Assembly: GCA_025786725.1 (NCBI GenBank)
Contig: JAHLTZ010000045.1
Coordinates: 62,001 to 126,000 of the forward strand
Reading direction: 5' to 3'
Source: Syncephalis fuscata S228
Lineage: Eukaryota; Fungi; Zoopagomycota
Length of the DNA: 64,000 nucleotides
This document shows, piece after piece, positions 3,698-36,839 of this stretch; position 1 is the first letter of the stretch, and every line of letters begins with the position of its first letter. The notes under the pieces were generated by a model that did no database searches, was not told the DNA's origin, and saw only the letters and a program-made list of their open reading frames with translations. The translations under genes and the position numbers were made by a program.

Positions 3698-6600
3698 TTA
3701 TCCAGAGGTTTGCCATTCAGTCTTTTGACCATTGGCCGTAGTCTTGGTATAATACTTGGTCACGGTTACTTTGTCGCCATCTGTTACGGTCTCAGTACGG
3801 ACAACCAAAACAGTACCGTCAGAATCAGTGCTTTCCTCAATGACCTCCTCAACAATTGGACCATCTTCTTCCTCGCCTTCAATAAATTGAACCTCAGAGT
3901 GAGTTGTTTGTTGTTGCTGTTGAGCAGGTGCAGCCACTGTAGTAGCTACTGGAGCTGGAGCTGAAACTGAGACGGTCTCTTGCACCACTGGCTGCTCCTC
4001 AGTAGTTGACCATTCAGATACTACGCCATTCAATGTCTTGGTGAAGTATTTGGTGATACGGCAACTAGTAGCTCCAGTAATGGTCACAGTTCGAATAACA
4101 AGACGGCCACCATCAACGTCAACGGTCTCTTCGATACCTTCTTGCATTGCTTCTCCTACACCAGCTACCGGCTGAGCGGCGACGTTAGCCTGTGCCGTTT
4201 GAGTAATATCAGCAGCAATAGAAATGGTTGCAGTAGCGGCGGCAGTAGCGGCAGCAGCAGCAGCATCAGGACTTGGACCGGCAGGAACAGCAACCCAAAC
4301 ACCATCAGCGTTCAGTTGTTCAACATCACTAGTAACCCATTGGCTTATTTGACCGTTCAAGTTCTTAGTAAAGTACTTGGTAATACGACGAGTATGGCTA
4401 TCGGCAATAGTAACAGTGCGGATTGTCAAATGACCTCCATCAGTATCGGTAGTTTCTTCTGTGGATTCTTGAACAGCATCATTAGCAGCACCAGCTGCAG
4501 CACCGTCTTGAGCATTAGCCGCCGCAGTAGAAGCGGCACCAGCAGGAACGGCTTCCCAAACACCATCAGCATTTAATTGCTCGACATCGCTTGTCATCCA
4601 TTGGCTTATTTGACCGTTCAAGTTCTTAGTAAAGTACTTGGTAATACGACGAGTATGGCTATCGGCAATAGTAACAGTGCGGATTGTCAAATGACCTCCA
4701 TCAGTATCGGTAGTTTCTTCTGTGGATTCTTGAACAGCATCATTAGCAGCACCAGCTGCAGCACCGTCTTGAGCACTAGCCGCCGCAGTAGAAGCGGCAC
4801 CAGCAGGAACGGCTTCCCAAACACCATCAGCATTTAATTGCTCGACATCGCTTGTCATCCATTGGCTTATTTGACCGTTCAAGTTTTTAGTAAAGTACTT
4901 GGTAATACGACGAATATGGCTGTCGGCAACAGTAACAGTGCGGATTGTCAAATGGCCTCCATCAGTATCTGTAGTCTCTTCGGTAGTTTCTTGAGCAGCA
5001 TCATTAGCAGCACCAGTCTCAGGGCCAGGACCAGGTGGCACAACTTCCCAAACGCCTTCAGCATTAAGTCGTTCACTATCGCTAGTAACCCATTGTGTAG
5101 TTTCGCCATTAAGTACCTTGGTATAATATTTTGTAACTTGACGAATATACGTGTCGGCATTAATAACAGTGCGAATGGTTAGCTTACCACCATCAGTATC
5201 GGTCTTTTCTTCAGTAAAATCTTGAACACCAACAGCGGTGTTAGCAGCAGCACCTGCGCCTACGCCAGCAGCAGCTGTTGCGGTTTGACCAATGACACCT
5301 GACGATTGAATGGCTGGTCCGGCTGCTTGTGTAATCTCTTGATGAGCTGCATGGGCTCCAGTCTTGATACTGCCTGATGCGCCAACAACTGACGTCGATC
5401 CATCGGCATTAACAACAATGTCGCCAGCTACTGATGTCTCGCCTTCGGCCTTAGCTACAATTGGTTCAACATCGCTCGTCATCCACTGGGTAACTTGACC
5501 GTTAAGTGTTTTGGTGAAGTATTTGGTAATACGACGAACTTGAGTATCCGATATGATCACAGTGCGAATGGACAAATGGCCGCCATCAGTGTCGGTCTCT
5601 TCTGTGGTAAACTCTTGAATACCACCTGATGGTCCAACAATGGTGACATCTTGTGGAGCAGGTGCAACTGGAGCGGCTGGCTGTTCAAGTGGCTGTTCTT
5701 CAGTATTCGACCATTCAGTGACTTCACCATTCAATGTGCGAGTGTAGTACTTGGTAATGCGGCGGCAACGACGTGTACGAACAGTAACTGTGCGTGTTAC
5801 TAAACGGGCTCCTTCGGCATCAATGGTCTCATCAACTGCTTCTTCCGGCTCTCCAATCACCTCTTCATCAATTTCAGTAGCAGCTGTTGTGGTAGTGCTC
5901 GAGTCTACAACAACATTTTTAGCATCACAGGTAGCTGACTTGGTGACTGCATCAGTGACTGCGCCTACGCCAGCAGCAGCAGTTGTGGTTTGACCAATGA
6001 CACCTGACGATTGAATGGCTGGTCCGGCTGCTTGTGTAATCTCTTGATGAGCTGCATGGGCTCCAGTCTTGATACTGCCTGATGCGCCAACAACTGACGT
6101 CGATCCATCGGCATTAACAACAATGTCGCCAGCTACTGATGTCTCGCCTTCGGCCTTAGCTACAATTGGTTCAACATCGCTCGTCATCCACTGGGTAACT
6201 TGACCGTTAAGTGTTTTGGTGAAGTATTTGGTAATACGACGAACTTGAGTATCCGATATGATCACAGTGCGAATGGACAAATGGCCGCCATCAGTGTCGG
6301 TCTCTTCTGTGGTAAACTCTTGAATACCACCTGATGGTCCAACAATGGTGACATCTTGTGGAGCAGGTGCAACTGGAGCGGCTGGCTGTTCAAGTGGCTG
6401 TTCTTCAGTATTCGACCATTCAGTGACTTCACCATTCAATGTGCGAGTGTAGTACTTGGTAATGCGGCGGCAACGACGTGTACGAACAGTAACTGTGCGT
6501 GTTACTAAACGGGCTCCTTCGGCATCAATGGTCTCATCAACTGCTTCTTCCGGCTCTCCAATCACCTCTTCATCAATTTCAGTAGCAGCTGTTGTGGTAG

Positions 6601-9600
6601 TGCTCGAGTCTACAACAACATTTTTAGCATCACAGGTAGCTGACTTGGTGACTGCATCAGTGACTGCGCCTACGCCAGCAGCAGCTGTTGCGGTTTGACC
6701 AATGACACCTGACGATTGAATGGCTGGTCCGGCTGCTTGTGTAATCTCTTGATGAGCTGCATGGGCTCCAGTCTTGATACTGCCTGATGCGCCAACAACT
6801 GACGTCGATCCATCGGCATTAACAACAATGTCGCCAGCTACTGATGTCTCGCCTTCGGCCTTAGCTACAATTGGTTCAACATCGCTCGTCATCCACTGGG
6901 TAACTTGACCGTTAAGTGTTTTGGTGAAGTATTTGGTAATACGACGAACTTGAGTATCCGATATGATCACAGTGCGAATGGACAAATGGCCGCCATCAGC
7001 GTCGGTCTCTTCTGTGGTAAACTCTTGAATACCACCTGATGGTCCAACAATGGTGACATCTTGTGGAGCAGGTGCAACTGGAGCGGCTGGCTGTTCAAGT
7101 GGCTGTTCTTCAGTATTCGACCATTCAGTGACTTCACCATTCAATGTGCGAGTGTAGTACTTGGTAATGCGGCGGCAACGACGTGTACGAACAGTAACTG
7201 TGCGTGTTACTAAACGGGCTCCTTCGGCATCAATGGTCTCATCAACTGCTTCTTCCGGCTCTCCAATCACCTCTTCATCAATTTCAGTAGCAGCTGTTGT
7301 GGTAGTGCTCGAGTCTACAACAACATTTTTAGCATCACAGGTAGCTGACTTGGTGACTGCATCAGTGACTGCGCCTACGCCAGCAGCAGCAGTTGTGGTT
7401 TGACCAATGACACCTGACGATTGAATGGCTGGTCCGGCTGCTTGTGTAATCTCTTGATGAGCTGCATGGGCTCCAGTCTTGATACTGCCTGATGCGCCAA
7501 CAACTGACGTCGATCCATCGGCATTAACAACAATGTCGCCAGCTACTGATGTCTCGCCTTCGGCCTTAGCTACAATTGGTTCAACATCGCTCGTCATCCA
7601 CTGGGTAACTTGACCGTTAAGTGTTTTGGTGAAGTATTTGGTAATACGACGAACTTGAGTATCCGATATGATCACAGTGCGAATGGACAAATGGCCGCCA
7701 TCAGCGTCGGTCTCTTCTGTGGTAAACTCTTGAATACCACCTGATGGTCCAACAATGGTGACATCTTGTGGAGCAGGTGCAACTAGAGCGGCTGGTTGAC
7801 TATCAGCCTGCTTTTGTTCTTCGACAACGATGTTTTTAGTGGCAGTGGTTTCGGAGCAGCTTGAAGTATCTACATCTACATTCACAGCAGCAGCTTCAGT
7901 TGCAACATCGGAAAGCACTGTCTCCTCAGTAGTTGTGATTATGGTCTTAGACTGCAAATCTGTCTCTTGTCTCGTTGTAGAGCAATCAACTTCCTGAATA
8001 ATAGAAGTATCATGCTGTTCAATTGAAACTGTAGTTGAGTCGACGTGCTCTTCTACTGTAGTAGAAGTTTCTGCCTGGCACTCCACTATAGCACTTGTTT
8101 CTGTCGAAGTTGCAATGTCCTCTGACTCTGTTACAGTCTTCACAATCTCTACTGAGTTATTGGAAGTCTGTATAATAATTGTACAATTAATTCAATATAA
8201 TAAATATATTTACTTATTTACTTACCTCAAACGATTCTTGTTGTTGAGTGTTATTCTTAGTAGCAGAGCTCTTGGAAGAAATGATGGCAGCTCCGGCAGC
8301 AACTCCAGCGACAGCAGCAATACCGGCAACGACAGCAGCCGTTTTAGTCGCACTCGACGTCTTTTTAGTAGTCGATGAAGAACCCGTTGATCTTGTTGAT
8401 TCAATTGGCACTGGTGTAGAGTCGGCTGATTTGGTCGACTCCATCGACGCCGAAGCAGAACCCGTTGATCTAGTTGTTTCAACTGGTACTGGTGTAAGAC
8501 CGGGCTCTTTAGCCATGGCGGGGCGGTTAGAGCGATGACGTCTACGGCGTCTCTTGCCAGTACCTGTGCCACTAGCTTCAGTAGAAGCTGGCTGCTCTCC
8601 AGATTTGGCCTTGCGGTTCTTCTTGGCACGATGCTTCTTGTGACGATGCTGCTTCTTACGACGAAGTCTCTTCTCTTTACGCCGTTCCTCACGTGCAGCC
8701 ACCGCCTCTGGCGACATATCTTTAGGACCATCACCTTCCTCTTCATCGGAAGATATATCCTCACTGTCCAATGAAGCATCAGACAACAATTCCTCGTTGC
8801 TTTCATCAGCATCAGAAAGGCCAATGTCATTTTCGCTATCTTCTTCAGATTCAGGTTCCGGTTCAGGGACAGCAACTGAAGCCTCTGGTTTAGCTGTTAC
8901 AGCGGCCGCAACAGCAGCTGTAGTTGCAGCCACAGCAGTTGCAGCAGCTACAACACCCTTTTGGCCGTGGTTCTTGCGACGGTTCTTCTTCTTCTTCTTT
9001 CGTCGGCCACCAGCGCCACTAGCACCGCCATCGGCACCTTGTGGCAAGTCAGTTTCTGAATCACTTTCCTCCAACTCCTGGCTGTCTGAAGCTGTATCAG
9101 CACCAACTTCAATCTCAACTTCATGCTCCTCAGGCACATCTAAAGCAACTTCAACAACTTCGATCGACTCTTCGCTGCGCTCTACATTCCAAGTCAAAAT
9201 CAATCGATAGATAAAGCGACGTCCAAATCGAACAACAACTTGTTGCTGTTGTGTCTCTTCAGTCTTCGTCTCAGTATCAGCTTCAACCAACACACTACGC
9301 TCAACAGTTCGACCTTCTGCAGTAATCCATACATAGATTGTACGACGAATAAACAGTATACCGCCGCGAGTAATTGAATCGGCAGTGGCCACTTGACGGT
9401 CAATAGATAAATCGGACTCAACCAAATCGACTGTTCTAAAACGCTCCTCGCCAGTAAGTTCATCCCAATAAAGAATCTGCCAAATAACACAGCGACGTCC
9501 GTCGCGAGTAGCAATAATAGCATCGTCAAATTGTTGGTCCGGATATACAGCAGCAATGTGGACTACATCGCGCACAAATTGTTCAGTGGCAACATTCCAA

Positions 9601-12600
9601 CGAACAATAGCTCGGCGTACATATTCTTGTCCAGAGCGAATTAGACAAGTAGGAGCACTTCGAGTTAATTGTGCTCGATCATATGTTACATTGGCACTCT
9701 CAACCAAATACTCGATAGTACGTGTAATAATTGTCAAGGTAATAACGCACCAAATGGTAATTGTACGGCGAATAAAGCGACGACCGTCACGTACCACAAT
9801 CTCTGATGTTACATCAGCATCTGATGAATCGCTATCAGAAGCAATATCAATTTCCTCACGGCGCGTAGTTCTGGTAGTTTCATCCCAAACATAAACAACA
9901 CGACGAAGGAAGCGGCGTCCATTGTGAGTGACTGGCGTTACATGTCGTGCTACTGGATTGCCTGGTCGATTATAGGACTCGTCGGGAACCTCTATCTTAT
10001 CATTAATAAACGATTTAGTTATTACATCCCATCGAATAATGTAACGAATAACATAATAACGACCATTACGCTCTACCGTGGTGACAGTATCTGTGTTTTC
10101 AAGTACATCGTCCGTTATATGAACAAATTCTCGAACTTCACGTTGTTGCTGCACATCCCAGCGAACGACTAGACGCCGTGTAAATGTACGACCTTCAACT
10201 ACAACACCAGATGCAGCTGCCAAAGCATTTGGTTGTGCTGCAACATATGTAAGAGCATTGTAATCGTCGGCATCAATTTCAACGACTTCTTCAATCTCCG
10301 TGGCCTGAACTACACTCCAGCAGTATATAACAATACGAATGAATCGACGACCATTACGAACAACTTCTTCGACTTGCTTCATGGCCAATTGGTCGGCGCT
10401 AATAGAATCGGCAGCAACTTCGATCTCCTCATTAACTTCTTGCTGTTGTGATTCTGACCAACGAGTAATAACACGGCGAATATAGCGCTTGCTGTCATTA
10501 CGAATAATCACATCAGTAGCTCCATTGGAAAATACTTGACCAGTACAATGATAGACATCGTCAGCAGAAAGTTCAACTTCTCTTGAAACAGCTGACTGCG
10601 TGCTGTTATCCCAAAAAGTAACCATATAACGAATAAAGCGTTTTCCATCACGAACTACTATAGCGTCGTTCTCTTCTTCTACAGTAGCGGCTGATTCTAA
10701 ATCGTCCAAAGCAACTTCATATGCCTCATTTACAATTGAGCTAGAAATAATATCCCATCGTGTAAATACTCGACGAACAAATCGTCGCTGCGAACGAACA
10801 ATAATGCCAGATTCAATAGATACATTATAAGCATCTGCTGATAGTGATTGCTCAATGTCTATAGTAGGCAATAACAAGGCGGCTTCTGTAGGTCTATCAG
10901 CTTGAGCTTGGGCAGCTTCTTCAGCAGTCAAATTCATTGGCATGTTAATAGGTTTACGCAGGCTCTTCTTTTCGTCATCAGCTTGCGTAGAATGGTCATG
11001 AACGCCAAATAGCTTGCTAAAGAATCCAGACTTGCGAGACGAGTGTTTCTGTTGTGATAGTAACACACCAGCAATAACCGCACTAGCAGCGGCAGTAGAT
11101 ACTGCCGTGGCAGCCACTGCAGTCGTCAATATAGAGCCGGACTCGGCCTCGACCTTCACCACTTCGTCGGTGACTTGCTGCACTTCATCCACGGCAAGTT
11201 CGACTTCTTCGGTCGCTGTCTTGTTTTCTTCGATGCTCCAGTATGTAAATACACGACGCACGAAGCGGCGGCCATTGCGCTCAACAATCGTCTCGGACTC
11301 GGCATCAACGCTGGCTGCTTCTTTAATGTCTTCTACCGCAACTTCGACTTCTTGCTGCACTTCCTTGTTTTCTTCAACACTCCAGCGAGTAAATACGCGA
11401 CGAACAAACACACGGCCCTGTCGGACAACTACGCCAGATGTTGCAAGTGCCGATGTCGTCTCCGACTCGACCTTAATGACCTCGCCGTGCACTTGCTGCA
11501 CCTCATCGGCAGCTACCTCTACATCTTCGCTAACCATTGCGTTCTGTTCGGTGCACCAACGGCTGATGGTGCGGCGTACGAAGCGGCGGCCATTGCGAAC
11601 GACAATTGCCTCAGAGCTGGCTTCAACGCTTGCGGCTTCTTTAACGTCTTCAACCGCGACTTCAGCTTCACGCTGGACTTCTCGGTTCTCTTCAACGCTC
11701 CACCAAGTGAACACACGACGTACAAACAAGCGGCCATTGCGTACAACTACGCCAGATGTAGCAACAGTGTCGGCTGCTACCACTGTGGCAAGCGTAGAGC
11801 CAGACTCGGCTTCTACTTTAACTACTTCGTCGCTAACTTGCTGGACATCATCCACGGCAATCTCGACCTCGTCAGTGACCGTCTTGTTCTCTTCAGCACT
11901 CCAGCGTGTAAATTGGCGGCGTACAAAGCGACGACCATTGCGCTCAACAATCGATTCAGAGTCGACATCAATACTGGCTGCTTCTTTGACTTCATCGGCA
12001 GCCAACTCGACTTCAACCTGGACCTCTTCGTTCTTTTCAGCGTCCCAACGCGTGAATAGACGACGAATAAACACACGACCATCACGAACGGCTGAGCTAG
12101 CAACAATGGCGACGGCTCCGGTAGCTGCTGCAACACCAACAACGGCAGCTGTCGTGGCTGCAGCGGCACTTGTAGTGATTGCTGTCACAAGTCCACTGCC
12201 GGCTTCCGACTCGACCTTGGTGACCTCGACTGTAGCTTCTTGCACTTCATCCACGGCAAGTTCGACTTCTTCGGTCACCGTTTTGTTTTCTTCGATGCTC
12301 CAGTACGTAAATACACGACGCACAAAGCGGCGGCCATTGCGCTCAACAACCGATTCAGATGTCGACTCGACAGTAGCTGCTTCTTTAATGTCTTCTACCG
12401 CAACTTCGACTTCTTGCTGCACTTCCTTGTTCTCTTCAACACTCCAGCGAGTAAACAAACGACGAACAAATAGACGGCCTTGACGGACTGCAACTCCAGC
12501 TGAAGCTGCTGTGGCAACTGCGGCTTCGGTCAATATGCTGCCAGACTCGGCCTCTACCTTAACCACTTCTTCACTGGCCTGTTGCACCTCATCAACGGCA

Positions 12601-15600
12601 ACTTCGACTTCATCGGTCACCGTCTTGTTCTCTTCAACGTTCCAGTGCGTGAATTTACGACGTACAAATCGACGGCCATTGCGCTCGACAACGGCTTCGG
12701 CCTCGGCCTCGGCGGTGATGTTGGCTGCTTCTTTGACTTCTTCAGCGTCAACTTCGACCTCGACTTGGACCTCTTCGTTCTTTTCAGCATCCCAGCGCGT
12801 AAACAAGCGACGAACAAATAGACGGCCTTGACGGACTGCAACTCCTGCTGCTGCTGTGGCAACGACTGCTGTGGCTGCTGTGGCTGCAACTGCTGTCGTC
12901 AATATCGAGCCAGACTCAGCCTCGACCTTCACCACTTCGTCGGTGACTTGCTGCACATCGTCCACAGCTACTTCAACTTCTTCAGTCACGGCCTTGTCTT
13001 CTTCAACACTCCAGCGTGTAAAGTAGCGACGCACAAAACGACGGCCATTGCGCTCAACAATCGTCTCGGACTCGGCATCAACGCTGGCTGCTTCTTTGAC
13101 TTCATCGGCAGCTAGCTCGACCTCGTACTGGACTTCCTTGTTCTCTGCAGTATTCCACCATGTGAATACGCGACGAACAAACACGCGGCCTTGTCGGACA
13201 ACTACGCCAGATGTTGCAAGTGCCGATGTCGTCTCCGACTCGACCTTAATGACCTCGCCGTGCACTTGCTGCACCTCATCGGCAGCTACCTCTACATCTT
13301 CGCTAACCGTTGTGTTCTGTTCGGTGCACCAACGGCTGATGGTGCGGCGTACGAAGCGGCGGCCATTGCGAACAACAATTGCCTCAGAGCTGGCTTCAAC
13401 ACTTGCGGCTTCTTTAACGTCTTCAACCGCGACTTCAGCTTCACGCTGGACTTCTCGGTTTCTTCAACGCTCCACCAAGTGAACACACGACGTACAAACA
13501 AGCGGCCATTGCGTACAACTACGCCAGATGTAGCAACAGTGTCGGCTGCTACCACAGTGGCAAGCGTAGAGCCAGACTCGGCTTCTACTTTGACTATTTC
13601 GTCGTTAACTTGCTGGACATCATCCACGGCAATCTCGACCTCATCAGTGACCGTCTTGTTCTCTTCAGCACTCCAGCGTGTAAATTGGCGGCGTACAAAG
13701 CGACGACCATTGCGCTCAACAATCGATTCAGAGTCGACATCAATACTGGCTGCTTCTTTGACTTCATCGGCAGCCAACTCGACTTCAACCTGGACCTCTT
13801 CGTTCTTTTCAGCGTCCCAACGCGTAAATAGACGACGAATAAACACACGACCATCACGAACGGCTGAGCTGGCAACAATGGCGACGGCTCCGGTAGCTGC
13901 TGCAACACCAACAACGGCAGCTGTCGTGGCTGCAGCGGCACTTGTAGTGATTGCTGTCACAAGTCCACTGCCGGCTTCCGACTCGACCTTGGTGACCTCG
14001 ACTGTAGCTTCTTGCACTTCATCCACGGCAAGTTCGACTTCTTCGGTCACCGTCTTGTTTTCTTCGATGCTCCAGTACGTAAATACACGACGCACGAAGC
14101 GGCGGCCATTGCGCTCAACAACCAATTCAGATGTCGACTCGACAGTAGCTGCTTCTTTAATGTCTTCTACCGCAACTTCGACTTCTTGCTGCACTTCCTT
14201 GTTCTCTTCAACACTCCAGCGAGTAAACAAACGACGAACAAATAGACGGCCTTGACGGACTGCAACTCCAGCTGAAGCTGCTGTGGCAACTGCGGCTTCG
14301 GTCAATATGCTGCCAGACTCGGCCTCTACCTTAACCACTTCTTCACTGGCCTGTTGCACCTCATCAACGGCAACTTCGACTTCATCGGTCACCGTCTTGT
14401 TCTCTTCAACATTCCAGTGCGTGAATTTACGACGTACAAATCGACGGCCATTGCGCTCGACAACGGCTTCGGCCTCGGCCTCGGCGGTGATGTTGGCTGC
14501 TTCTTTGACTTCTTCAGCGTCAACTTCGACCTCGACTTGGACCTCTTCGTTCTTTTCAGCATCCCAGCGCGTAAACAAGCGGCGAACAAATAGACGGCCT
14601 TGACGGACTGCAACTCCTGCTGCTGCTGTGGCAACGACTGCTGTGGCTGCTGTGGCTGCAACTGCTGTCGTCAATATCGAGCCAGACTCAGCCTCGACCT
14701 TCACCACTTCGTCGGTGACTTGCTGCACATCGTCCACAGCTACTTCAACTTCTTCAGTCACGGCCTTGTCTTCTTCAGCACTCCAGCGTGTAAAGTAGCG
14801 ACGCACGAAGCGACGGCCATTGCGCTCAACAATCGTCTCGGACTCGGCATCAACGCTGGCTGCTTCTTTGACTTCATCGGCAGCTAGCTCGACCTCGTAC
14901 TGGACTTCCTTGTTCTCTGCAGTATTCCACCATGTGAATACGCGACGAACAAACACGCGGCCTTGTCGGACAACTACGCCAGATGTTGCAAGTGCCGATG
15001 TCGTCTCCGACTCGACCTTAATGACCTCGCCGTGCACTTGCTGCACCTCATCGGCAGCTACCTCTACATCTTCGCTAACCGTTGTGTTCTGTTCGGTGCA
15101 CCAACGGCTGATGGTGCGGCGTACGAAGCGGCGGCCATTGCGAACAACAATTGCCTCAGAGCTGGCTTCAACACTTGCGGCTTCTTTAACGTCTTCAACC
15201 GCGACTTCAGCTTCACGCTGGACTTCTCGGTTCTCTTCAACGCTCCACCAAGTGAACACACGACGTACAAACAAGCGGCCATTGCGTACAACTACGCCAG
15301 ATGTAGCAACAGTGTCGGCTGCTACCACAGTGGCAAGCGTAGAGCCAGACTCGGCTTCTACTTTGACTACTTCGTCGCTAACTTGCTGGACATCATCCAC
15401 GGCAATCTCGACCTCGTCAGTGACCGTCTTGTTCTCTTCAGCACTCCAGCGTGTAAATTGGCGGCGTACAAAGCGACGACCATTGCGCTCAACAATCGAT
15501 TCAGAGTCGACATCAATACTGGCTGCTTCTTTGACTTCATCGGCAGCCAACTCGACTTCAACCTGGACCTCTTCGTTCTTTTCAGCGTCCCAACGCGTAA

Positions 15601-21600: not shown

Positions 21601-24600
21601 CAGCGTCAACTTCGACCTCGACTTGGACCTCTTCGTTCTTTTCAGCATCCCAGCGCGTAAACAAGCGGCGAACAAATAGGCGCCTTGACGGACTGCAACT
21701 CCTGCTGCTGCTGTGGCAACGACTGCTGTGGCTGCTGTGGCTGCAACTGCTGTCGTCAATATCGAGCCAGACTCAGCCTCGACCTTCACCACTTCGTCGG
21801 TGACTTGCTGCACATCGTCCACAGCTACTTCAACTTCTTCAGTCACGGCCTTGTCTTCTTCAACACTCCAGCGTGTAAAGTAGCGACGCACGAAGCGACG
21901 GCCATTGCGCTCAACAATCGTCTCGGACTCGCATCACACTGGCTGCTTCTTTGACTTCATCGGCAGCTAGCTCGACCTCGTACTGGACTTCCTTGTTCTC
22001 TGCAGTATTCCACCATGTGAATACGCGACGAACAAACACGCGGCCCTGTCGGACAACTACGCCAGATGTTGCAAGTGCCGATGTCGTCTCCGACTCGACC
22101 TTAATGACCTCGCCGTGCACTTGCTGCACCTCATCGGCAGCTACCTCTACATCTTCGCTAACCATTGCGTTCTGTTCGGTGCACCAACGGCTGATGGTGC
22201 GGCGTACGAAGCGGCGGCCATTGCGAACGACAATTGCCTCAGAGCTGGCTTCAACGCTTGCGGCTTCTTTAACGTCTTCAACCGCGACTTCAGCTTCACG
22301 CTGGACTTCTCGGTTCTCTTCAACGCTCCACCAAGTGAACACACGACGTACAAACAAGCGGCCATTGCGTACAACTACGCCAGATGTAGCAACAGTGTCG
22401 GCTGCTACCACTGTGGCAAGCGTAGAGCCAGACTCGGCTTCTACTTTGACTACTTCGTCGCTAACTTGCTGGACATCATCCACGGCAATCTCGACCTCGT
22501 CAGTGACCGTCTTGTTCTCTTCAGCACTCCAGCGTGTAAATTGGCGGCGTACAAAGCGACGACCATTGCGCTCAACAATCGATTCAGAGTCGACATCAAT
22601 ACTGGCTGCTTCTTTGACTTCATCGGCAGCCAACTCGACTTCAACCTGGACCTCTTCGTTCTTTTCAGCGTCCCAACGCGTGAATAGACGACGAATAAAC
22701 ACACGACCATCACGAACGGCTGAGCTGGCAACAATGGCGACGGCTCCGGTAGCTGCTGCAACACCAACAACGGCAGCTGTCGTGGCTGCAGCGGCACTTG
22801 TAGTGATTGCTGTCACAAGTCCACTGCCGGCTTCCGACTCGACCTTGGTGACCTCGACTGTAGCTTCTTGCACTTCATCCACGGCAAGTTCGACTTCTTC
22901 GGTCACCGTTTTGTTTTCTTCGATGCTCCAGTACGTAAATACACGACGCACAAAGCGGCGGCCATTGCGCTCAACAACCGATTCAGATGTCGACTCGACA
23001 GTAGCTGCTTCTTTAATGTCTTCTACCGCAACTTCGACTTCTTGCTGCACTTCCTTGTTCTCTTCAACACTCCAGCGAGTAAACAAACGACGAACAAATA
23101 GACGGCCTTGACGGACTGCAACTCCAGCTGAAGCTGCTGTGGCAACTGCGGCTTCGGTCAATATGCTGCCAGACTCGGCCTCTACCTTAACCACTTCTTC
23201 GCTGGCCTGTTGCATCTCATCGACGGCAACTTCGACTTCATCGGTCACCGTCTTGTTCTCTTCAACGTTCCAGTGCGTGAATTTACGACGTACAAATCGA
23301 CGGCCATTGCGCTCGACAACGGCTTCGGCCTCGGCCTCGGCGGTGATGTTGGCTGCTTCTTTGACTTCTTCAGCGTCAACTTCGACCTCGACTTGGACCT
23401 CTTCGTTCTTTTCAGCATCCCAGCGCGTAAACAAGCGGCGAACAAATAGGCGGCCTTGACGGACTGCAACTCCTGCTGCTGCTGTGGCAACGACTGCTGT
23501 GGCTGCTGTGGCTGCAACTGCTGTCGTCAATATCGAGCCAGACTCAGCCTCGACCTTCACCACTTCGTCGGTGACTTGCTGCACATCGTCCACAGCTACT
23601 TCAACTTCTTCAGTCACGGCCTTGTCTTCTTCAACACTCCAGCGTGTAAAGTAGCGACGCACGAAGCGACGGCCATTGCGCTCAACAATCGTCTCGGACT
23701 CTGCATCGACACTGGCTGCTTCTTTGACTTCATCGGCAGCTAGCTCGACCTCGTACTGGACTTCCTTGTTCTCTGCAGTATTCCACCATGTGAATACGCG
23801 ACGAACAAACACGCGGCCCTGTCGGACAACTACGCCAGATGTTGCAAGTGCCGATGTCGTCTCCGACTCGACCTTAATGACCTCGCCGTGCACTTGCTGC
23901 ACCTCATCGGCAGCTACCTCTACATCTTCGCTAACCATTGCGTTCTGTTCGGTGCACCAACGGCTGATGATGCGGCGTACGAAGCGGCGGCCATTGCGAA
24001 CGACAATTGCCTCAGAGCTGGCTTCAACGCTTGCGGCTTCTTTAACGTCTTCAACCGCGACTTCAGCTTCACGCTGGACTTCTCGGTTCTCTTCAACGCT
24101 CCACCAAGTGAACACACGACGTACAAACAAGCGGCCATTGCGTACAACTACGCCAGATGTAGCAACAGTGTCGGCTGCTACCACTGTGGCAAGCGTAGAG
24201 CCAGACTCGGCTTCTACTTTAACTACTTCGTCGCTAACTTGCTGGACATCATCCACGGCAATCTCGACCTCGTCAGTGACCGTCTTGTTCTCTTCAGCAC
24301 TCCAGCGTGTAAATTGGCGGCGTACAAAGCGACGACCATTGCGCTCAACAATCGATTCAGAGTCGACATCAATACTGGCTGCTTCTTTGACTTCATCGGC
24401 AGCCAACTCGACTTCAACCTGGACCTCTTCGTTCTTTTCAGCGTCCCAACGCGTGAATAGACGACGAATAAACACACGACCATCACGAACGGCTGAGCTG
24501 GCAACAATGGCGACGGCTCCGGTAGCTGCTGCAACACCAACAACGGCAGCTGTCGTGGCTGCAGCGGCACTTGTAGTGATTGCTGTCACAAGTCCACTGC

Positions 24601-27600
24601 CGGCTTCCGACTCGACCTTGGTGACCTCGACTGTAGCTTCTTGCACTTCATCCACGGCAAGTTCGACTTCTTCGGTCACCGTTTTGTTTTCTTCGATGCT
24701 CCAGTACGTAAATACACGACGCACAAAGCGGCGGCCATTGCGCTCAACAACCGATTCAGATGTCGACTCGACAGTAGCTGCTTCTTTAATGTCTTCTACC
24801 GCAACTTCGACTTCTTGCTGCACTTCCTTGTTCTCTTCAACACTCCAGCGAGTAAACAAACGACGAACAAATAGACGGCCTTGACGGACTGCAACTCCAG
24901 CTGAAGCTGCTGTGGCAACTGCGGCTTCGGTCAATATGCTGCCAGACTCGGCCTCTACCTTAACCACTTCTTCGCTGGCCTGTTGCATCTCATCGACGGC
25001 AACTTCGACTTCATCGGTCACCGTCTTGTTCTCTTCAACGTTCCAGTGCGTGAATTTACGACGTACAAATCGACGGCCATTGCGCTCGACAACGGCTTCG
25101 GCCTCGGCCTCGGCGGTGATGTTGGCTGCTTCTTTGACTTCTTCAGCGTCAACTTCGACCTCGACTTGGACCTCTTCGTTCTTTTCAGCATCCCAGCGCG
25201 TAAACAAGCGGCGAACAAATAGGCGGCCTTGACGGACTGCAACTCCTGCTGCTGCTGTGGCAACGACTGCTGTGGCTGCTGTGGCTGCAACTGCTGTCGT
25301 CAATATCGAGCCAGACTCAGCCTCGACCTTCACCACTTCGTCGGTGACTTGCTGCACATCGTCCACAGCTACTTCAACTTCTTCAGTCACGGCCTTGTCT
25401 TCTTCAACACTCCAGCGTGTAAAGTAGCGACGCACGAAGCGACGGCCATTGCGCTCAACAATCGTCTCGGACTCTGCATCGACACTGGCTGCTTCTTTGA
25501 CTTCATCGGCAGCTAGCTCGACCTCGTACTGGACTTCCTTGTTCTCTGCAGTATTCCACCATGTGAATACGCGACGAACAAACACGCGGCCCTGTCGGAC
25601 AACTACGCCAGATGTTGCAAGTGCCGATGTCGTCTCGACTCGACCTTAATGACCTCGCCGTGCACTTGCTGCACCTCATCGGCAGCTACCTCTACATCTT
25701 CGCTAACCATTGCGTTCTGTTCGGTGCACCAACGGCTGATGTGCGGCGTACGAAGCGGCGGCCATTGCGAACGACAATTGCCTCAGAGCTGGCTTCAACG
25801 CTTGCGGCTTCTTTAACGTCTTCAACCGCGACTTCAGCTTCACGCTGGACTTCTCGGTTCTCTTCAACGCTCCACCAAGTGAACACACGACGTACAAACA
25901 AGCGGCCATTGCGTACAACTACGCCAGATGTAGCAACAGTGTCGGCTGCTACCACTGTGGCAAGCGTAGAGCCAGACTCGGCTTCTACTTTAACTACTTC
26001 GTCGCTAACTTGCTGGACATCATCCACGGCAATCTCGACCTCGTCAGTGACCGTCTTGTTCTCTTCAGCACTCCAGCGTGTAAATTGGCGGCGTACAAAG
26101 CGACGACCATTGCGCTCAACAATCGATTCAGAGTCGACATCAATACTGGCTGCTTCTTTGACTTCATCGGCAGCCAACTCGACTTCAACCTGGACCTCTT
26201 CGTTCTTTTCAGCGTCCCAACGCGTGAATAGACGACGAATAAACACACGACCATCACGAACGGCTGAGCTGGCAACAATGGCGACGGCTCCGGTAGCTGC
26301 TGCAACACCAACAACGGCAGCTGTCGTGGCTGCAGCGGCACTTGTAGTGATTGCTGTCACAAGTCCACTGCCGGCTTCCGACTCGACCTTGGTGACCTCG
26401 ACTGTAGCTTCTTGCACTTCATCCACGGCAAGTTCGACTTCTTCGGTCACCGTCTTGTTTTCTTCGATGCTCCAGTACGTAAATACACGACGCACAAAGC
26501 GGCGGCCATTGCGCTCAACAACCGATTCAGATGTCGACTCGACAGTAGCTGCTTCTTTAATGTCTTCTACCGCAACTTCGACTTCTTGCTGCACTTCCTT
26601 GTTCTCTTCAACACTCCAGCGAGTAAACAAACGACGAACAAATAGACGGCCTTGACGGACTGCAACTCCAGCTGAAGCTGCTGTGGCAACTGCGGCTTCG
26701 GTCAATATGCTGCCAGACTCGGCCTCTACCTTAACCACTTCTTCGCTGGCCTGTTGCATCTCATCGACGGCAACTTCGACTTCATCGGTCACCGTCTTGT
26801 TCTCTTCAACGTTCCAGTGCGTGAATTTACGACGTACAAATCGACGGCCATTGCGCTCGACAACGGCTTCGGCCTCGGCCTTGGCGGTGATGTTGGCTGC
26901 TTCTTTGACTTCTTCAGCGTCAACTTCGACCTCGACTTGGACCTCTTCGTTCTTTTCAGCATCCCAGCGCGTAAACAAGCGGCGAACAAATAGGCGGCCT
27001 TGACGGACTGCAACTCCTGCTGCTGCTGTGGCAACGACTGCTGTGGCTGCTGTGGCTGCAACTGCTGTCGTCAATATCGAGCCAGACTCAGCCTCGACCT
27101 TCACCACTTCGTCGGTGACTTGCTGCACATCGTCCACAGCTACTTCAACTTCTTCAGTCACGGCCTTGTCTTCTTCAACACTCCAGCGTGTAAAGTAGCG
27201 ACGCACGAAGCGACGGCCATTGCGCTCAACAATCGTCTCGGACTCTGCATCGACACTGGCTGCTTCTTTGACTTCATCGGCAGCTAGCTCGACCTCGTAC
27301 TGGACTTCCTTGTTCTCTGCAGTATTCCACCATGTGAATACGCGACGAACAAACACGCGGCCCTGTCGGACAACTACGCCAGATGTTGCAAGTGCCGATG
27401 TCGTCTCCGACTCGACCTTAATGACCTCGCCGTGCACTTGCTGCACCTCATCGGCAGCTACCTCTACATCTTCGCTAACCATTGTGTTCTGTTCGGTGCA
27501 CCAACGGCTGATGGTGCGGCGTACGAAGCGGCGGCCATTGCGAACGACAATTGCCTCAGAGCTGGCTTCAACACTTGCGGCTTCTTTAACGTCTTCAACC

Positions 27601-30600
27601 GCAACTTCAGCTTCACGCTGGACTTCTCGGTTCTCTTCAACGCTCCACCAAGTGAACACACGACGTACAAACAAGCGGCCATTGCGTACAACTACGCCAG
27701 CCTTTCAGCTGCTGCCTTAGCGGTCTCAGTCAGCTTGCTGTTAGACTTGGCTTCCACTTTAACTACTTCAACATTGGCACTTTGAAGATCATCGACAGCA
27801 ACTTCAGTTGTTTCTTCAATAGACTGACTAGTTTCACTGTCCCATCGTCGGAAAGTACGACGAATAAAGCGACGACCGTTGCGCTCAATAATTTTGCTTT
27901 CAGAAATGTTGGCAACTGCAGACGAAATATCTTCAGCATCTACTTCAATTTCTTTTTGCTCTTCAGCGCCGGTAACTTCGTTCCAGTAGGTAAATGTACG
28001 AATAACGTAACGACGACGGACACGAACAATAACAACGGCAGTAATAGTGGCTACTTCAGACTTGGCCAGTTCTAAATCATTGGCATCAATACACACTTCA
28101 CGTTCAACAATGCGTTGCTTAATCTGATCCCAAATACTGAATCGACGAACAATGTAACGACGTCCTTTACGCGTAATAACCGAGCCACGTAAAACTTCAG
28201 TCTGATCAGCGGCCTTATTAATGTCGTCTTCAGCCAGCTCAATCATAAAAGAGACCGATTGCCTTGCACGAGAATCCCAGAATCTCATGAACCGACGAAT
28301 AAACCGACGGCTTTGTCGAATAATTACAGAAGCCGATAGGCTAAGTACTTCAGTGTGTGCTGTCTGAAGATCTGAAGATTCTAAATAAATTTCTTCTTGT
28401 ACTGACTCATTAGTAGCGGCATTCCAACGAGTAAATTGGCGAACCAAGAATGTACGGCCATCATGGCTAATGGTTTGGAAGGTGCCTTCTTGTGCCAAGG
28501 CAGTCTCTTCAATGTCCTGAGCAGCAATCTCAAGCTCCTTTTGTACAAGCTGGCGAGTGCTATAGTAGTAGACTGTATAGATTCGCTTAACAAAGCGACG
28601 ACCATGATGAAAAACGACTATATCAGCCGGTGAGGCGTTCAACGTCTTGAAAGATTCCTCACAGCAACGAGTAAGTTCCTCAGCGTTAAGTTCCAGCTCT
28701 TCTTCTGTCAGCTCATTTGTTTCATCATTCCAACGGGCAAATACACGACGAACAAACTTGTGGCCATGACGGAAAATAATATAAGCACGGCATGTTGCCG
28801 CATGTTCTTTGGCTGAAGTTATATCATCAAGAGCCAGCTCAACTTCAATAGGAATGGCACGGTCCTTTGAAACACTCCAGCGCATAAATGTATAGCGAAT
28901 AAAACGTTCGTTATTGCGTAGAATAACATGTTCGTTGCTGTTAGAGTATAGCTCTTGACGAGCAAGGTCAAAGGCACTATTGACATCGTCCAAATCTAGT
29001 TCAATAATTTCCTGAACAATAGAGCGAGTTCGAACATCCCAGCGACGGAATACACGGCGAATAAAGCGGCGCTCGTTACGAACCATCACAACTATAGACG
29101 ATTGGTGAGCGTGAGCTGCAAATTCCAGCTGGTCGAGCGGTATCTCAGCTTCCTCGTGAGTAATCGTCTGGCTTTCGTGGTGCCAGCGACTAAAGACACG
29201 ACGAACAAATCGGCGGCCCGAACGAATAATAACTTGTGAGGTGTAAGTGCCAGCATAATTGCTCTTCCTGCGCAAGAGATCACCAGTATCGGCTACGTAG
29301 ATCTCACGGACTTCTTGGTGCTCTTGGCCACTTTCTTCGTTCCAGCGAAGAACCATTCGACGAACGTAGCGACGGCCCTGACGTGTGGACACAACATCAT
29401 CCTTACCAGATGTCTCATTGTCGGAGTCATCGTTGGCCTTATCCATAACATGTACCATGGTTAAATCTTCACGTTGTGCTTTCTCGTCCCATAAATAGAC
29501 ATAGCGCCGAATAAAACGAATATTACCACGAACAAGTACATTAACAGCAAATATAGGATTTAAAGCAATACTGCCGGCACGTTCTACATCGTCGACCAGA
29601 AGGTCAAATTCTTCAACAACTGGCTGACATTGCTTTCGACTCCAACGAGTAAAAGTATAGTGTCCAATGCGCTTGCCATTTTGTTCGGTGATTTTGATAC
29701 TCTCATGGTTGTTAATAGTAGCTGCGGCAGCTAGACGCAGTTCTTCTTCATCGAATTCAAATTCATGTTCATTCAAACGAGCTTGCTTGGTGAACCAGCA
29801 AGTAAAGAATCGGCGTACAAATCGACGCGACTGGCGAACAATAACAGCCGTTGGAATGTTGGCAATGGCAACATAAGCCTGTTGTAAGTCATCAATGGCT
29901 ACTTCGTTGCTTTCATCAACGGTCTTTTTGGCACGAGCATCCCATTTGCTAATAACATGCTTGTAAAAACGACGTCCATTATGGACAACAATATTGGCAC
30001 ACGAATTGTCGGTACATTCGCCAATAATGTTGGCCACATCATCGACAAACATCTCGCCAACTCGGCGGTTCTCACGTCCGGCAACAGAGTCCCAGAAGGT
30101 AAATACGCGTCGTAGATAGCGCCGGCGATGGTGTACAATCGACACAGCGGCCAGTGTAGAGATTTCAGTTTGTGCCTGGCAAAGATCTTCTGACGAAATT
30201 GTCAGCTCTCCCTGACCAATACGGAAAGATGGCTGTCCCAGTAAGTAAATTGGATGCGGACATAGCGGCGACCATTGCGAACAACAATGTTAGCGCCATC
30301 ACCGCTCAAAGCAATGCCAACAGCACGCTGTACATCGTTGGCCGACAGCTCAATTTCTTCGCGAGAGCTTGCATTAGATGTTTCGTCCCATCGAATAAAT
30401 ATACGACGAATTAAGCGATGGCCACTTCGAATAACAATACTTGCTGCAAGGTTGGATGCCTCGACATCAGCCAGCTTAACATCATCTTGCAACAATTCAG
30501 TATCCAAATAGGCAACAGCATTGGTCTGAACATCCCATAGTGTGTAAACACGATGCACGTAGCGTTGGCCAGCGTGGATTTTGATTGAAGTAGCGTCTTG

Positions 30601-32932
30601 AGGCTCACTAGCAGCTTGGGCAATATCTTCGGCCGCAACCTCGACCGGTTCCTGAATAGCAGAAGATGTATCAGCGCACCAGCGGCTAATGATACGACGA
30701 ATAAAACGACGGCCATTACGGACAATGACTTGGGAAGCGAAACGGGCTGCTTCGGCAATTGCAAGATCAACATCATCAACGGCCAATTCCATAACACTGC
30801 GGTCGCTCTTGGCAAGCTTCAAATTCCATTGCGAGATAGAATATTTGATAAAACGGCGATTCTTATGCGTGGTATTGATGCCAGAAGACTTGCACCAGCA
30901 CGACTAACCGCTTCAATAAGATCGTCGGCACTTAGTTCGAGCTCTCGAGTTTCAATACGAGCTCCCGAAGAGATGTAACAAGCGAAGGACCGGCGAATAA
31001 AGCGTCGGCCCGAACGTACAATAACACGACCCGTGTCTTTGCTGTCCTTATTGCTCATTATAGTAGTGGTCGAGGCAAGACCAGAAGCCAAAGAAGAGCC
31101 GGGTTCGACATCTCGGCTCTTGGACTTTTGAGGCTTGCCAAAGAACCAGGACTCAACTCGATGAACAGCAGTAGCTACCCCTTCGACGGCATCGTGAGCA
31201 ACATGACTAATAATGTTCTCTGAAGCTTGTTCTTCAGTTACTGGCGTCTTTTCTTCTTGACGAGACGATGGCTGCGATGGCAAAGGCTTAGTGCTGCTTC
31301 TGGTTGTGACGGCGGCTGTTGTGGTAGTACTGACATGCGTTTTGATGATGATGACGCAGCAGAAGCCGGGGCCGGTTTGGCTTCTATTTCAGTAGAGCCC
31401 TTCTTGGATTTCTTCGACTTGCTGCTACTGCCCCAAAGACGGCTAAAAAACCCGGACTTTTTATCATCGTCAGAGTCGGTCGAAAGCGGATAGGCAATAA
31501 CATCTGTAGATACAACTGGGGCGTAGAGCTGCTCCTGAGCGGCGCAATTCAAATCAAGCCAGGAAAAATCAGAATCATAAGTAGTGTGAGATTTGGTGGG
31601 TACAGCACTGCTTCGACGAACGTAGCCATCATCAGACTGAGCACTAAGTGTGCGCCGGAAACGGGCGGGCTGCGAAGCTTCCCATTGACTAAACGCCGTA
31701 AGTAGACCATCCACACATTCCCTCACCTGAGGAGTGCTAGCAATATCGGAAAAGCTTTCACTCGGCGTGACGGCTCCAGAGCGACGGGTTTCGGCAACAT
31801 TACGCAAGGCAGTAGCAATATCAAATTCAGTAAGTCCACGATGGCCTGGACGATGGCGATTACGTAGAGATTGCTCTGTTTCGTACACATTAATGTCTTT
31901 GCTAGCCAATAATTCATCGGACTCGTGCAGGGTGGCGAGCGTGCCGTCACTCTGGATAGCCAGGCCAGCAGCAGATTTGGCAGTCATTTCTTGAGAGATT
32001 TCAGTCGTTGAGCGACACTGATTTTCTGACGACATTTGAACAGTGGCCGTTTCACGAATAGTAAAAAGATCACAAGACGAAGGCAGCCAGCGTAGAAGCC
32101 ACAAATAGTAAATAGCAAAGAAGAACGGTCCTGCCTGCGAGGTAATATGGGCCGAAAATGAAAGCATATTACTTGCATCATCAGTGCCGAAAAGAGCAAC
32201 TGTAATATTATGTGATGCATACCAGCCTACCACTGCGGCGTAGACCAAAGAAAATACAGATAGGCGAAGCTTGAAACGCTTAAGCACAGAATCATTGGCC
32301 TTAACGGCTGTAATTGTGCTAGCGTTTGAATAGATAGTAGTAAAATTACGTAAAGCGGGAATGGTGACCACAAGCCAGGCCGTCATGGAAAGAGCGCCAA
32401 TGACTGCGTGAATTGGACGTTCTGCCGATGGCTCTGGGCGACAAGCGACAGCACGACCTTGGCTATCCAATACAAGTGTCTGCCACCAGTCACGGGTCAT
32501 CCATAAAAATCCAGTAGAAGCCACACAACCAGCAACCCAAAGAGATGAAAGCAACGCGCCACGGCCACTTAGCATTGGACGAGCTGAAGTAGCTTGTGTA
32601 GCGTAACGCTGCGAATACGCAGCCAGAGCACCTGTATAGGCCATGCTAGCCATGCGAAGAATAAGCCGAGTTCCATGATTGTTGCGGCACGTATCCACAG
32701 TAAGATTGGATGCATTATTGCTAACTGAAGCGTAGAGAGCCCGGAGCTCATCCAGCTCACCCAGTAAAGTGGATGCGGCACATGCGAGATCAATCAATAC
32801 GGCAACAGATACAAGACGCACAATTAAATGTTCACGCTTGCGCCACAGTAAAGTTAGACTGTAGGACAAGCCAACAATGGCGCATGCTTGTAGTCCAAGC
32901 AATGCAACCGAGAAATCAGGTGAGAACCACAT
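3698..32932 (-). CDS. Giant (~9,700 aa) multi-repeat protein with an N-terminal 7-TM GPCR-like domain; exons 32932-8226 and 8167-3698; 11 apparent assembly frameshifts
   Basis: Consecutive minus-strand ORFs (564, 154, 206, 817, 660, 1224, 598, 204, 2023, 1686 and 1481 aa) join through 1-2 nt indels near 31340, 30890, 30210, 27705, 25740, 25636, 21930, 21680, 19893, 19365 and 13457. A phase-0 GTAAGT...TACAG intron at 8225-8168 joins the last exon in frame. Repaired length is 29,187 nt = 9,728 aa plus stop. An upstream exon is possible (acceptor near 32954). Confidence 0.75.
4280..5010 (-). repeat. Coding tandem repeat, 240-bp (80-aa) unit, 3 copies
   Basis: TDTDGGHLTIRTVT...RRITKYFTKNLNGQISQW(M/V)TSDVEQLNADGVW repeated at 240-bp spacing. 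Confidence 0.93.
5250..7790 (-). repeat. Coding tandem repeat, 705-bp (235-aa) unit, about 3.6 copies
   Basis: Near-identical blocks spaced 705 bp apart (shadow ORFs at 5751, 6456, 7161). Each has two ...DGG/EGAxLxxRTV...RRITKY(F/Y)TxTLNGxVTxW motifs. Confidence 0.95.
11110..27700 (-). repeat. Coding tandem super-repeat, 1,773-bp (591-aa) unit, 9 full copies plus one partial chimeric copy
   Basis: The marker GCGTACAACTACGCCAG recurs every ~1,773 bp from ~11740 to ~27685. Each unit holds ten VxRxGRxFVRRxFTxW...ExEVAxDE motifs. One copy has an in-frame 6-bp deletion near 18015. Confidence 0.97.
32090..32932 (-). other. 7-transmembrane domain resembling cAMP-receptor/Git3-type fungal GPCRs
   Basis: Seven hydrophobic segments. 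Cys before TM3 (TCRNN) and in ECL2 (AVACRP); TM3 ends ...QRY; Trp in TM4; TM6 RLSVFSLVY...W; TM7 QAGPFFFAIYY. Confidence 0.65.
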
Positions 32933-36465: not shown

Positions 36466-36839
36466 CTACAAATGAGCAGGCATAATGGCTGATCCGGTTG
36501 CAACCCCAACGGCCGTGGAGCGCTGCCACGTGTAGCCTTGGAAAATCGGTGATCGATGAGCCGCACTAAACACTTGTTGATGATAGTGCGCCTCGATTTC
36601 TGGTGATGGATACGCGTTCTTTAATGGAACAATAGCCATACGCGAGGCAAAGAAAGCTGGATGGAACCGAGCTGGGTCGGCTTCTGTGGTATAAAGAATA
36701 ATACTCGTCATTAGCTATAACCAACTAACGCGAGACTGCGCAATGACTATACGTCATCAGCAGCTGTCCAGGTAGACAGGCACTTGCCTTGACGCAATAT
36801 AGGCGAAAGTAATTCCGAAGCATTGCTAAATAACGACAT
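36466..36839 (-). CDS. Small hypothetical protein (~111 aa), probable 38-nt intron at 36752-36715
   Basis: GC-richer island in AT-rich DNA. ATG at 36839, a phase-0 GTATAG...TATAG intron joins the 81-aa ORF in frame. No recognisable motif. Confidence 0.35.

What the first reader, a model, noticed from the sequence alone, without database searches (positions are those of the whole stretch)
3698..32932. A ~9,700-aa (about 1 MDa) protein: 7-TM GPCR-like head fused to a giant repeat tail
Seen: the many minus-strand ORFs form one continuous coding frame once 11 small indels are repaired and a canonical 58-nt intron (8225-8168) is spliced. The repaired length, 29,187 nt, divides exactly by three. 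The first ~280 aa have seven hydrophobic helices with GPCR-type landmarks (Cys before TM3 and in ECL2, TM3 ..RY, TM4 Trp, TM6 RL..F.LVY, TM7 G.FF.AI.Y). No intergenic or AT-rich gap separates them from the repeats. Knowledge: a 7-TM receptor has its C-terminus in the cytoplasm. Known giant fungal proteins include the Woronin-body tether Leashin and the wound-gelling Gellins of Mucoromycota; I do not recognise a GPCR with a tail like this. Inference: a membrane-anchored tether, spring or cytoplasmic scaffold coupled to a receptor, for example in mechanosensing, wound plugging or host contact.
Basis: partly seen in the sequence, partly recalled or inferred. Interest (0 to 1): 0.92.

Follow-up and report, generated by a model that had tools for sequence, protein, structure and literature searches.

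The report
Megadalton receptor-like protein in mycoparasitic fungi
Fungus-parasitising moulds of the genus Syncephalis carry an overlooked gene for a roughly 9,700-residue protein in which a seven-helix, GPCR-like membrane head is joined to a cytoplasmic chain of about 140 small repeats that match no known family; it would be larger than any described GPCR and may be a membrane-anchored tether or spring.

Summary
Observation confirmed. The window is Syncephalis fuscata (Zoopagales). With 11 small indels bridged and one 58-nt intron removed, 32932-3698 is one 9,728-codon frame with a single stop. The four breaks between head and array are restored by independent short-read contigs, one on a heterozygous site. 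The S. pseudoplumigaleata orthologue carries head, linker and repeats in one unbroken frame, with conserved synteny. S. plumigaleata and a soil contig keep the same 590-aa, 10-unit super-repeat and the C-terminal repeats under purifying selection; copies are homogenised within each species. The tail has 128 beta-beta-beta-alpha units (confident AlphaFold model, no fold match) and 13 units of a second repeat; both were found only in Syncephalis-like sequences. The head has seven helices with N-out/C-in charge bias and GPCR-clan neighbours in the ESM Atlas, but no Pfam or structural confirmation. Best reading (45%): a membrane-anchored, titin/Leashin-like tether or spring. Not shown: a full-length mRNA or protein, G-protein coupling, any function; the exact length depends on the assembled repeat number. 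Earlier notes of this scan cover only this same DNA.

The parts
32078..32932 (-). 7-TM GPCR-like head, aa 1-285, N-out/C-in, Cys82 before TM3 and Cys164 in ECL2
   Evidence: hydropathy and loop charges; ESM Atlas neighbours; 76% identical orthologue; pN/pS 0.19
31032..32077 (-). Ser-rich linker aa 286-634 with three short conserved blocks (31837-31778, 31729-31676, 31540-31517); assembly frameshift at 31295
31430..31462 (-). First basic-aromatic motif (KKSGFFSRLWG), resembling a MinD-type membrane-targeting helix (resemblance from memory, untested)
   Evidence: conserved in three sequences
27701..31031 (-). 22 divergent type-A repeats (about 49 aa each, beta-beta-beta-alpha); assembly frameshifts at 30891, 30225, 27701
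11102..27700 (-). Tandem array of about 9.4 super-repeats of 1,773 nt (591 aa), each 10 type-A units as 5 doublets with Ala-rich linkers; 94 units; copies 97-99.8% identical; net charge about -408; seven assembly frameshifts
11007..11045 (-). Second basic-aromatic motif (RKSGFFSKLFG) directly after the array
   Evidence: conserved in L037 and L052
9108..10811 (-). 12 further divergent type-A repeats
8226..9107 (-). Low-complexity segment of alternating acidic and polybasic blocks
   Evidence: conserved in L037 and L052
8168..8225 (-). 58-nt AT-rich GT..AG intron; retention would stop the frame at 8214
   Evidence: introns at a similar place in two other species; splicing not observed directly
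3698..8167 (-). Last exon: Thr/Glu-rich spacer and 13 type-B repeats (about 62 aa, 7744-3701), partly in 705-nt and 261-nt tandem units; stop at 3698

Best explanation
One real gene encodes a membrane protein of about 1 MDa. SHOWN: one reading frame in S. fuscata; head-to-repeat fusion in a second species; purifying selection on every part; a folded beta-beta-beta-alpha repeat arranged in doublets. INFERRED: the 7-TM head, derived from a cAMP-receptor/Git3/secretin-clan GPCR, anchors the chain in a membrane with the tail in the cytoplasm. The roughly 64 two-unit domains joined by Ala-rich linkers form an acidic beads-on-a-string filament, very roughly 0.3 micrometre long if each doublet spans about 4 nm. 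Two basic-aromatic helices flanking the array give extra membrane contacts, and the type-B end binds a partner (organelle, cytoskeleton or copies of itself). It would work like Leashin or titin: a tether, spacer or spring whose length is set by repeat number, possibly passing tension to or from the receptor head during host attachment or haustorium formation.
For: Single frame; fused orthologue with synteny; super-repeat register conserved between species (590 vs 591 aa, 74.5% identity, pN/pS 0.20) while copies within a species are 99-100% identical; repeat number varies between haplotypes in whole units; strongly acidic array with no catalytic domain; confident repeat model, pLDDT 88, pTM 0.75; positive-inside topology puts the tail in the cytoplasm. 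Precedent for giant acidic repeat tethers in fungi: PMC2690989; for a membrane-anchored one: PMC5345055.
Against: No functional, localisation or expression data. No sequence or fold link to titin, Leashin or any known tether. Known fungal tethers are unstructured P/E/L/S-rich chains, whereas this array is folded and lacks proline. No partner is known. The length estimate is a guess because model coordinates could not be read.
Confidence: 0.45

Rival explanations
1. Signalling receptor with a giant multivalent scaffold (a GPCR-bigram-like design): the head senses a host or self cue, and the tail presents dozens of copies of a binding surface, perhaps for single-stranded nucleic acid as PUR/PC4/Whirly-like domains do.
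For: GPCR landmarks and both ECL2 and TM3 cysteines are conserved at 76% identity, more than a bare anchor might need. The best though weak structural rows for the repeat are SsgB/SsgA, PUR-alpha and related two-fold beta/alpha folds (Z 2.5-3.9). The central strand is rich in Arg and aromatic residues.
Against: Z below 4 is noise level for that tool; no PC4, PurA, Whirly or SsgA Pfam row among the 25 families shown for 72 repeat windows; the array is strongly acidic; G-protein coupling untested; no catalytic domain as in described bigrams (PMC6033456).
Confidence: 0.2
2. Gellin-like wound plug: shear unfolds the small beta-rich domains, and their Arg-rich and Glu-rich strands re-pair between molecules into a gel anchored at the membrane in these mostly aseptate hyphae.
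For: Zoopagomycotina thalli are generally coenocytic (PMC6899921); Gellins gel by shear-induced unfolding and aggregation (PMC10873517); the repeat has charge-segregated strands.
Against: No sequence match to Mucoromycota proteins in 1.84 billion representatives; the fold is not a beta-trefoil and the array has 10 Cys in 5,525 aa (Gellin domain features recalled from memory); a strict super-repeat register is not needed for gelation.
Confidence: 0.15
3. One frame, several products: as with Neurospora leashin, internal promoters, intron retention or proteolysis give a shorter receptor and separate repeat proteins, so the 1-MDa species is rare or absent.
For: Neurospora lah was predicted as 10,821 aa but makes two proteins (PMC2690989). 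Retention of the 58-nt intron stops the frame at 8214; two other species have one more stop-containing intron just after the array. A soil homologue keeps its repeats behind a decayed head (L038).
Against: No AT-rich promoter-like gap between head and array; X1 contigs run through head, linker and repeats with no joint, and depth rises steadily towards the 3' end as one long oligo-dT-primed transcript would give (that X1 is RNA is only a guess).
Confidence: 0.15
4. Artefact: two neighbouring genes or a decaying repeat expansion joined by optimistic frameshift repair.
For: Eleven breaks in the assembly; five or six array breaks rest only on sister units; the array length is uncertain.
Against: Short reads restore the four decisive breaks; an independently assembled species reads through them; pN/pS 0.03-0.35 throughout; S. 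plumigaleata has 1,984 unbroken codons of the array.
Confidence: 0.03

Closest known systems
Leashin / Lah (Pezizomycotina Woronin-body tether)
   Same: Giant (5,900-10,800 aa predicted), acidic, repeat-rich fungal protein with distinct end domains; A. fumigatus Lah has a membrane anchor (PMC2690989, PMC5345055).
   Different: No sequence similarity found; Lah repeats are short unstructured P/E/L/S motifs and it has one C-terminal TM segment. Here there is an N-terminal 7-TM bundle and folded, proline-free domains, in a lineage outside the Woronin-body fungi.
GPCR-bigrams (oomycete and amoebozoan GPCR-PIPK, -AC, -PDE, -TKL; 7TM-RGS)
   Same: N-terminal 7-TM domain fused to a cytoplasmic C-terminal accessory part (PMC6033456).
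   Different: No catalytic or RGS domain; the tail is about 9,400 aa of unrecognised repeats.
Adhesion GPCR ADGRV1/VLGR1
   Same: A GPCR with a very long repeat region and a role in mechanosensing; called by far the largest GPCR (PMC8024656).
   Different: Its repeats are extracellular and N-terminal, with a GAIN/GPS cleavage site; here the repeats follow TM7 on the cytoplasmic side, and the chain is longer (ADGRV1 is about 6,300 aa, from memory).
Titin and nebulin super-repeats (from general knowledge)
   Same: Hierarchical unit, doublet and super-repeat architecture with a conserved register and recent homogenised duplications.
   Different: No Ig, Fn3 or nebulin fold; membrane-anchored; fungal.
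Gellins (Mucoromycota)
   Same: Large multidomain beta-rich proteins of coenocytic early-diverging fungi.
   Different: No homology; different fold; no conserved per-domain cysteine; a 7-TM head.
PUR / PC4 / Whirly / SsgA-like folds
   Same: Beta-meander plus helix units that pair into two-fold domains; the best weak rows in the structure comparison.
   Different: Z 3.9 or less, rmsd 3.6 A or more over about 73 residues; no profile match.

Membership tests
GPCR clan (CAR/Git3/7tm_2-like) | Seven TM helices, N-out/C-in | tested here: met
   Seven segments in both species; basic loops after TM1, TM3, TM5; TM3 and TM7 weakly hydrophobic; no dedicated TM predictor was available
GPCR clan (CAR/Git3/7tm_2-like) | Cys at the top of TM3 and in ECL2 | tested here: met
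   C82 and C164 invariant in two species; the disulfide itself is inferred
GPCR clan (CAR/Git3/7tm_2-like) | Profile match to a GPCR family | tested here: inconclusive
   No Pfam or PDB hit; hhalign to the genome's own CAR-like receptor 2.5% probability; global alignment z 3.5 for one orthologue and -0.6 for the other; ESM Atlas scores 0.93-0.95 with all ten best named hits in one GPCR clan
GPCR clan (CAR/Git3/7tm_2-like) | GPCR fold | tested here: inconclusive
   Single-sequence model pLDDT 42, pTM 0.29; fold searches uninformative
GPCR clan (CAR/Git3/7tm_2-like) | Couples to a heterotrimeric G protein | not testable with these tools
   needs an assay
GPCR-bigrams | Catalytic C-terminal accessory domain | tested here: not met
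   No Pfam family over its cut-off with a passing stretch in the tail pieces scanned
Adhesion GPCRs | Long extracellular N-terminus with GAIN/GPS | tested here: not met
   TM1 starts at aa 11 in both species
Leashin/Lah | Sequence homology; P/E/L/S-rich unstructured repeats; single C-terminal TM | tested here: not met
   No Pezizomycotina hits; array has 0% Pro; repeats fold
Leashin/Lah | Tethers an organelle to the cortex | not testable with these tools
   needs localisation
Gellins | Beta-trefoil domains each with a conserved Cys (recalled from memory; the primary paper was not held) | tested here: not met
   beta-beta-beta-alpha fold; 10 Cys in 5,525 aa; no Mucoromycota hit
Gellins | Shear-induced gelation | not testable with these tools
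   needs an experiment
PUR/PC4/Whirly/SsgA fold | Structural superposition | tested here: inconclusive
   Best Z 3.9, rmsd 3.6, 73 residues, SsgB; Atlas TM 0.34 or less

The most novel reading that the evidence does not exclude
A working G-protein-coupled receptor that is itself a megadalton cytoplasmic filament: a receptor-tether in which a titin-like spring of a new fold couples host contact or mechanical load to signalling from inside the cell, the topological inverse of adhesion GPCRs.
Probability: 0.25. Interest if true: 0.9.

Novelty: categorically new. Interest (0 to 1): 0.78.

Why it matters
If made full-length it would be among the largest fungal proteins and longer than the largest described GPCR, with the bulk on the cytoplasmic side, an architecture I found no report of in the library searched. 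It adds two unclassified repeat domains, one with a confident model and no fold match. It is a clean case of a conserved super-repeat register under concerted evolution in a fungus. Three public genomes annotate only fragments of it (KAI9591729.1, RKP27335.1 with an antisense tail, KAI8055168.1), so genes of this kind are probably missed in other early-diverging fungi. It gives a concrete candidate for host attachment or cortex mechanics in a widespread mycoparasite about which almost nothing molecular is known.

Tried and rejected
Pfam on head and tail pieces: only noise. Word-index searches with the head found no relative; these see only proteins of 0.55-1.75 times the query length and so missed the 1,766-aa orthologue. 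Two metagenome scans were blank. ESM Atlas blank for the repeats. PDB sequence profiles blank; a weak Rhs hit for type B (E 0.02) is taken as beta-hairpin noise. WD40 hits P0006-P0008 are false (matches to a 15-26 position fragment). Types A and B are not detectably related. Fold searches of the repeat in PDB, BFVD and the Atlas gave no match. No close paralogue of the head in its own genome, although CAR-like and orphan 7-TM genes exist there. The idea that the C46 copy is a paralogue was dropped: C46 carries the downstream SLA1 neighbour seen in S. plumigaleata and the window's contig carries the upstream ARD/Arp2 neighbours, so it is read as the other haplotype. No Rfam hit in the window. 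The Gellin primary paper was not held. Walking upstream in S. plumigaleata to its head was not possible: no called gene lay in the fetched array.
Full report
Organism. The genome is 29.36 Mb in 371 contigs. A fragment of this gene is in NCBI as KAI9591729.1, Syncephalis fuscata, on a contig of the same 151,723 bp as the window's contig. Syncephalis belongs to the Zoopagales, Zoopagomycota; the family parasitises other fungi, and the subphylum is mostly coenocytic, attaches with sticky substances and forms haustoria (PMC6899921).

Is it one frame? The minus strand from 32932 to 3698 is tiled by long overlapping ORFs. Independent short-read contigs laid on 27500-33400 insert one base behind 27701, 30224/30226, 30891 and 31295 and show no other indel or joint. 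At 30224/30226 two alleles appear at equal depth (5.4 and 5.5), so the long-read consensus dropped a base at a heterozygous site. One contig spans 30227-33176, that is the whole head, linker and first repeats. Aligning the 1,773-nt units to each other defines seven more frameshifts and one in-frame 6-nt deletion. No other intron-like or promoter-like AT-rich gap lies inside. The joined model existed only inside scripts, with N at each break, for frame arithmetic and local alignment to fetched loci.

Second haplotype and length. Contig C46 ends inside the same array and matches window 2353-20087 at 98.7-99.3%. It restores the break at 13458-13460 and has one 705-nt unit fewer in the last exon. 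C46 carries the single SLA1 gene about 30 kb downstream, the neighbour found in S. plumigaleata, whereas the window's contig has the upstream neighbours. I read them as two alleles of one locus. Short-read depth climbs from about 10 upstream of the ATG to 13.7 (head), 24.5 (first repeats) and 564-685 on array sequence present about 9-10 times in the assembly. If the run is RNA, as the tool guesses, this fits 3' bias on one long transcript; if it is DNA, the array has more than 20 copies and the protein is longer still. I could not tell which.

Conservation. A profile of 39 type-A units against 1.84 billion proteins gave four true hits. S. pseudoplumigaleata RKP27335.1 starts with the same head (76% identical) and runs unbroken for 1,038 codons through linker and repeats at 68% identity; the next contig, scaffolded the wrong way round, covers aa 1069-1783 at 66%. 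These frames cross the four decisive breaks, and the ARD and actin-family genes upstream are syntenic. S. plumigaleata (found with the type-B piece) has the same 10-unit super-repeat with a period of 1,770 nt, then the same post-array repeats, acidic/basic blocks, introns and type-B exon. A soil contig (L037) shows the same for aa 6649-9728. Uncorrected pN/pS is 0.14-0.35 between species for head, repeats and last exon, with synonymous sites near saturation, and 0.03-0.13 among array copies. Copies are 99-100% identical within a species but 74.5% between species: a conserved register under concerted evolution. No single contig outside S. fuscata spans the whole gene; fusion is shown piecewise. 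Another soil contig (L038) has a homologue whose head carries three in-frame stops and an internal deletion while the linker and 12 repeats stay open, so the repeats may persist without the head.

The head. Seven hydrophobic segments start at aa 11; loops after TM1, TM3 and TM5 are basic and the others acidic or neutral, giving N-out/C-in and a cytoplasmic tail. C82 and C164 are conserved. The ESM Atlas places it beside unnamed eukaryotic clusters (0.95; the first with Zoopagomycota members) and cAMP-receptor, Git3, 7tm_1 and 7tm_2 clusters (0.93-0.94, 174-185 shared features; all ten best named hits in one clan). Pfam, PDB profiles and comparison with the genome's own CAR-like receptor are negative or weak, and the single-sequence model is unusable. 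It is probably a diverged GPCR-clan domain; this is not proven, and coupling is untested.

The tail. There are 128 type-A units: 22 divergent, 94 in the array, 12 divergent. In the array the spacing alternates 48-50 and 58-85 aa, so the building block is a doublet followed by an Ala-rich linker, five doublets per super-repeat. AlphaFold with a 72-row internal alignment gives a confident four-unit model (pLDDT 88, pTM 0.75): three strands and a helix per unit, with an Arg/aromatic second strand and an acidic third strand. No library gave a fold match; the best rows are SsgA/B and PUR-alpha at Z 2.5-3.9, a lead only. The array has a net charge near -408, no proline and almost no cysteine. A basic-aromatic motif of the type KxGFFSxLxG lies in the linker and again just after the array, conserved in the homologues; it recalls the MinD membrane-targeting helix (from memory, untested; its computed hydrophobic moment was not outstanding). 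The last exon has 13 copies of a second 62-aa repeat, unrelated to type A and likewise without a match.

Mechanism. Shown: one frame, fusion, selection, topology by charge bias, a folded repeat. Inferred: a membrane-anchored acidic filament of about 64 small domains acting as a tether, spacer or spring, with length set by repeat number (45%). Rivals: a signalling receptor with a multivalent binding scaffold (20%), a Gellin-like wound gel (15%; PMC10873517), several shorter products from one frame as in Neurospora leashin (15%; PMC2690989), artefact (3%).

Comparison. It is not a Leashin, a Gellin, an adhesion GPCR or a described GPCR-bigram (PMC6033456): a defining feature of each was tested and not met. 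It may still work like Leashin or titin. Searches of the held literature for Syncephalis with GPCR or with this species found no description; that library lacks most subscription journals. I rate the architecture as categorically new, with the caveats that it is known from one genus, that function is untested and that the head's fold is unconfirmed. Interest 0.78.

Noticed in passing
window 1-2317 and L021:8127-10000 (G000:C312:60127-64317): A 4.2-kb DIRS-like retrotransposon (reverse transcriptase, RNase H, tyrosine recombinase; about 144-bp inverted ends) just downstream of the gene; the part searched is 100% identical on C314 and C90, so it is recent. It is absent at this place on C46, and the contig beyond it does not match C46, so the window's contig may be mis-joined or rearranged here.
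   Followed up: partly
L038:198-3234 (JGI soil contig Ga0503146_0040160): Homologue with a decayed 7-TM head (three in-frame stops, internal deletion) but an open linker and 12 type-A repeats ending in a stop; a near-identical piece occurs in SRR5690606.
   Followed up: partly
L036:11503-14606 (S. pseudoplumigaleata KZ989225.1): The scaffold has a contig inverted across a gap, so the C-terminal 700 aa of RKP27335.1 are an antisense artefact.
   Followed up: yes
L052:5919-5975 and L037:2176-2226 (approximate), versus window about 11000: S. plumigaleata and the soil species have an intron right after the second basic-aromatic motif; S. fuscata has none there. Retention would end the protein at this motif.
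   Followed up: partly
G000:C212:164000-181000 and G000:C306:343000-347000: Clusters of ordinary-length CAR-like and orphan 7-TM receptor genes; none is close to this head.
   Followed up: partly
window 36457-36850 (-): Small gene conserved with S. pseudoplumigaleata (about 85% aa over 75 codons) between the giant gene and ARD; not identified.
   Followed up: no
   Followed up: no
window 38951-63198: Ordinary neighbours: ARD, Arp2-like actin, Erv1/Alr, BCS1, mitochondrial ribosomal L21-like, ribosome recycling factor-like, ATP synthase F1 subunit (L21, RRF and Arp2 read from the sequence by eye).
   Followed up: no
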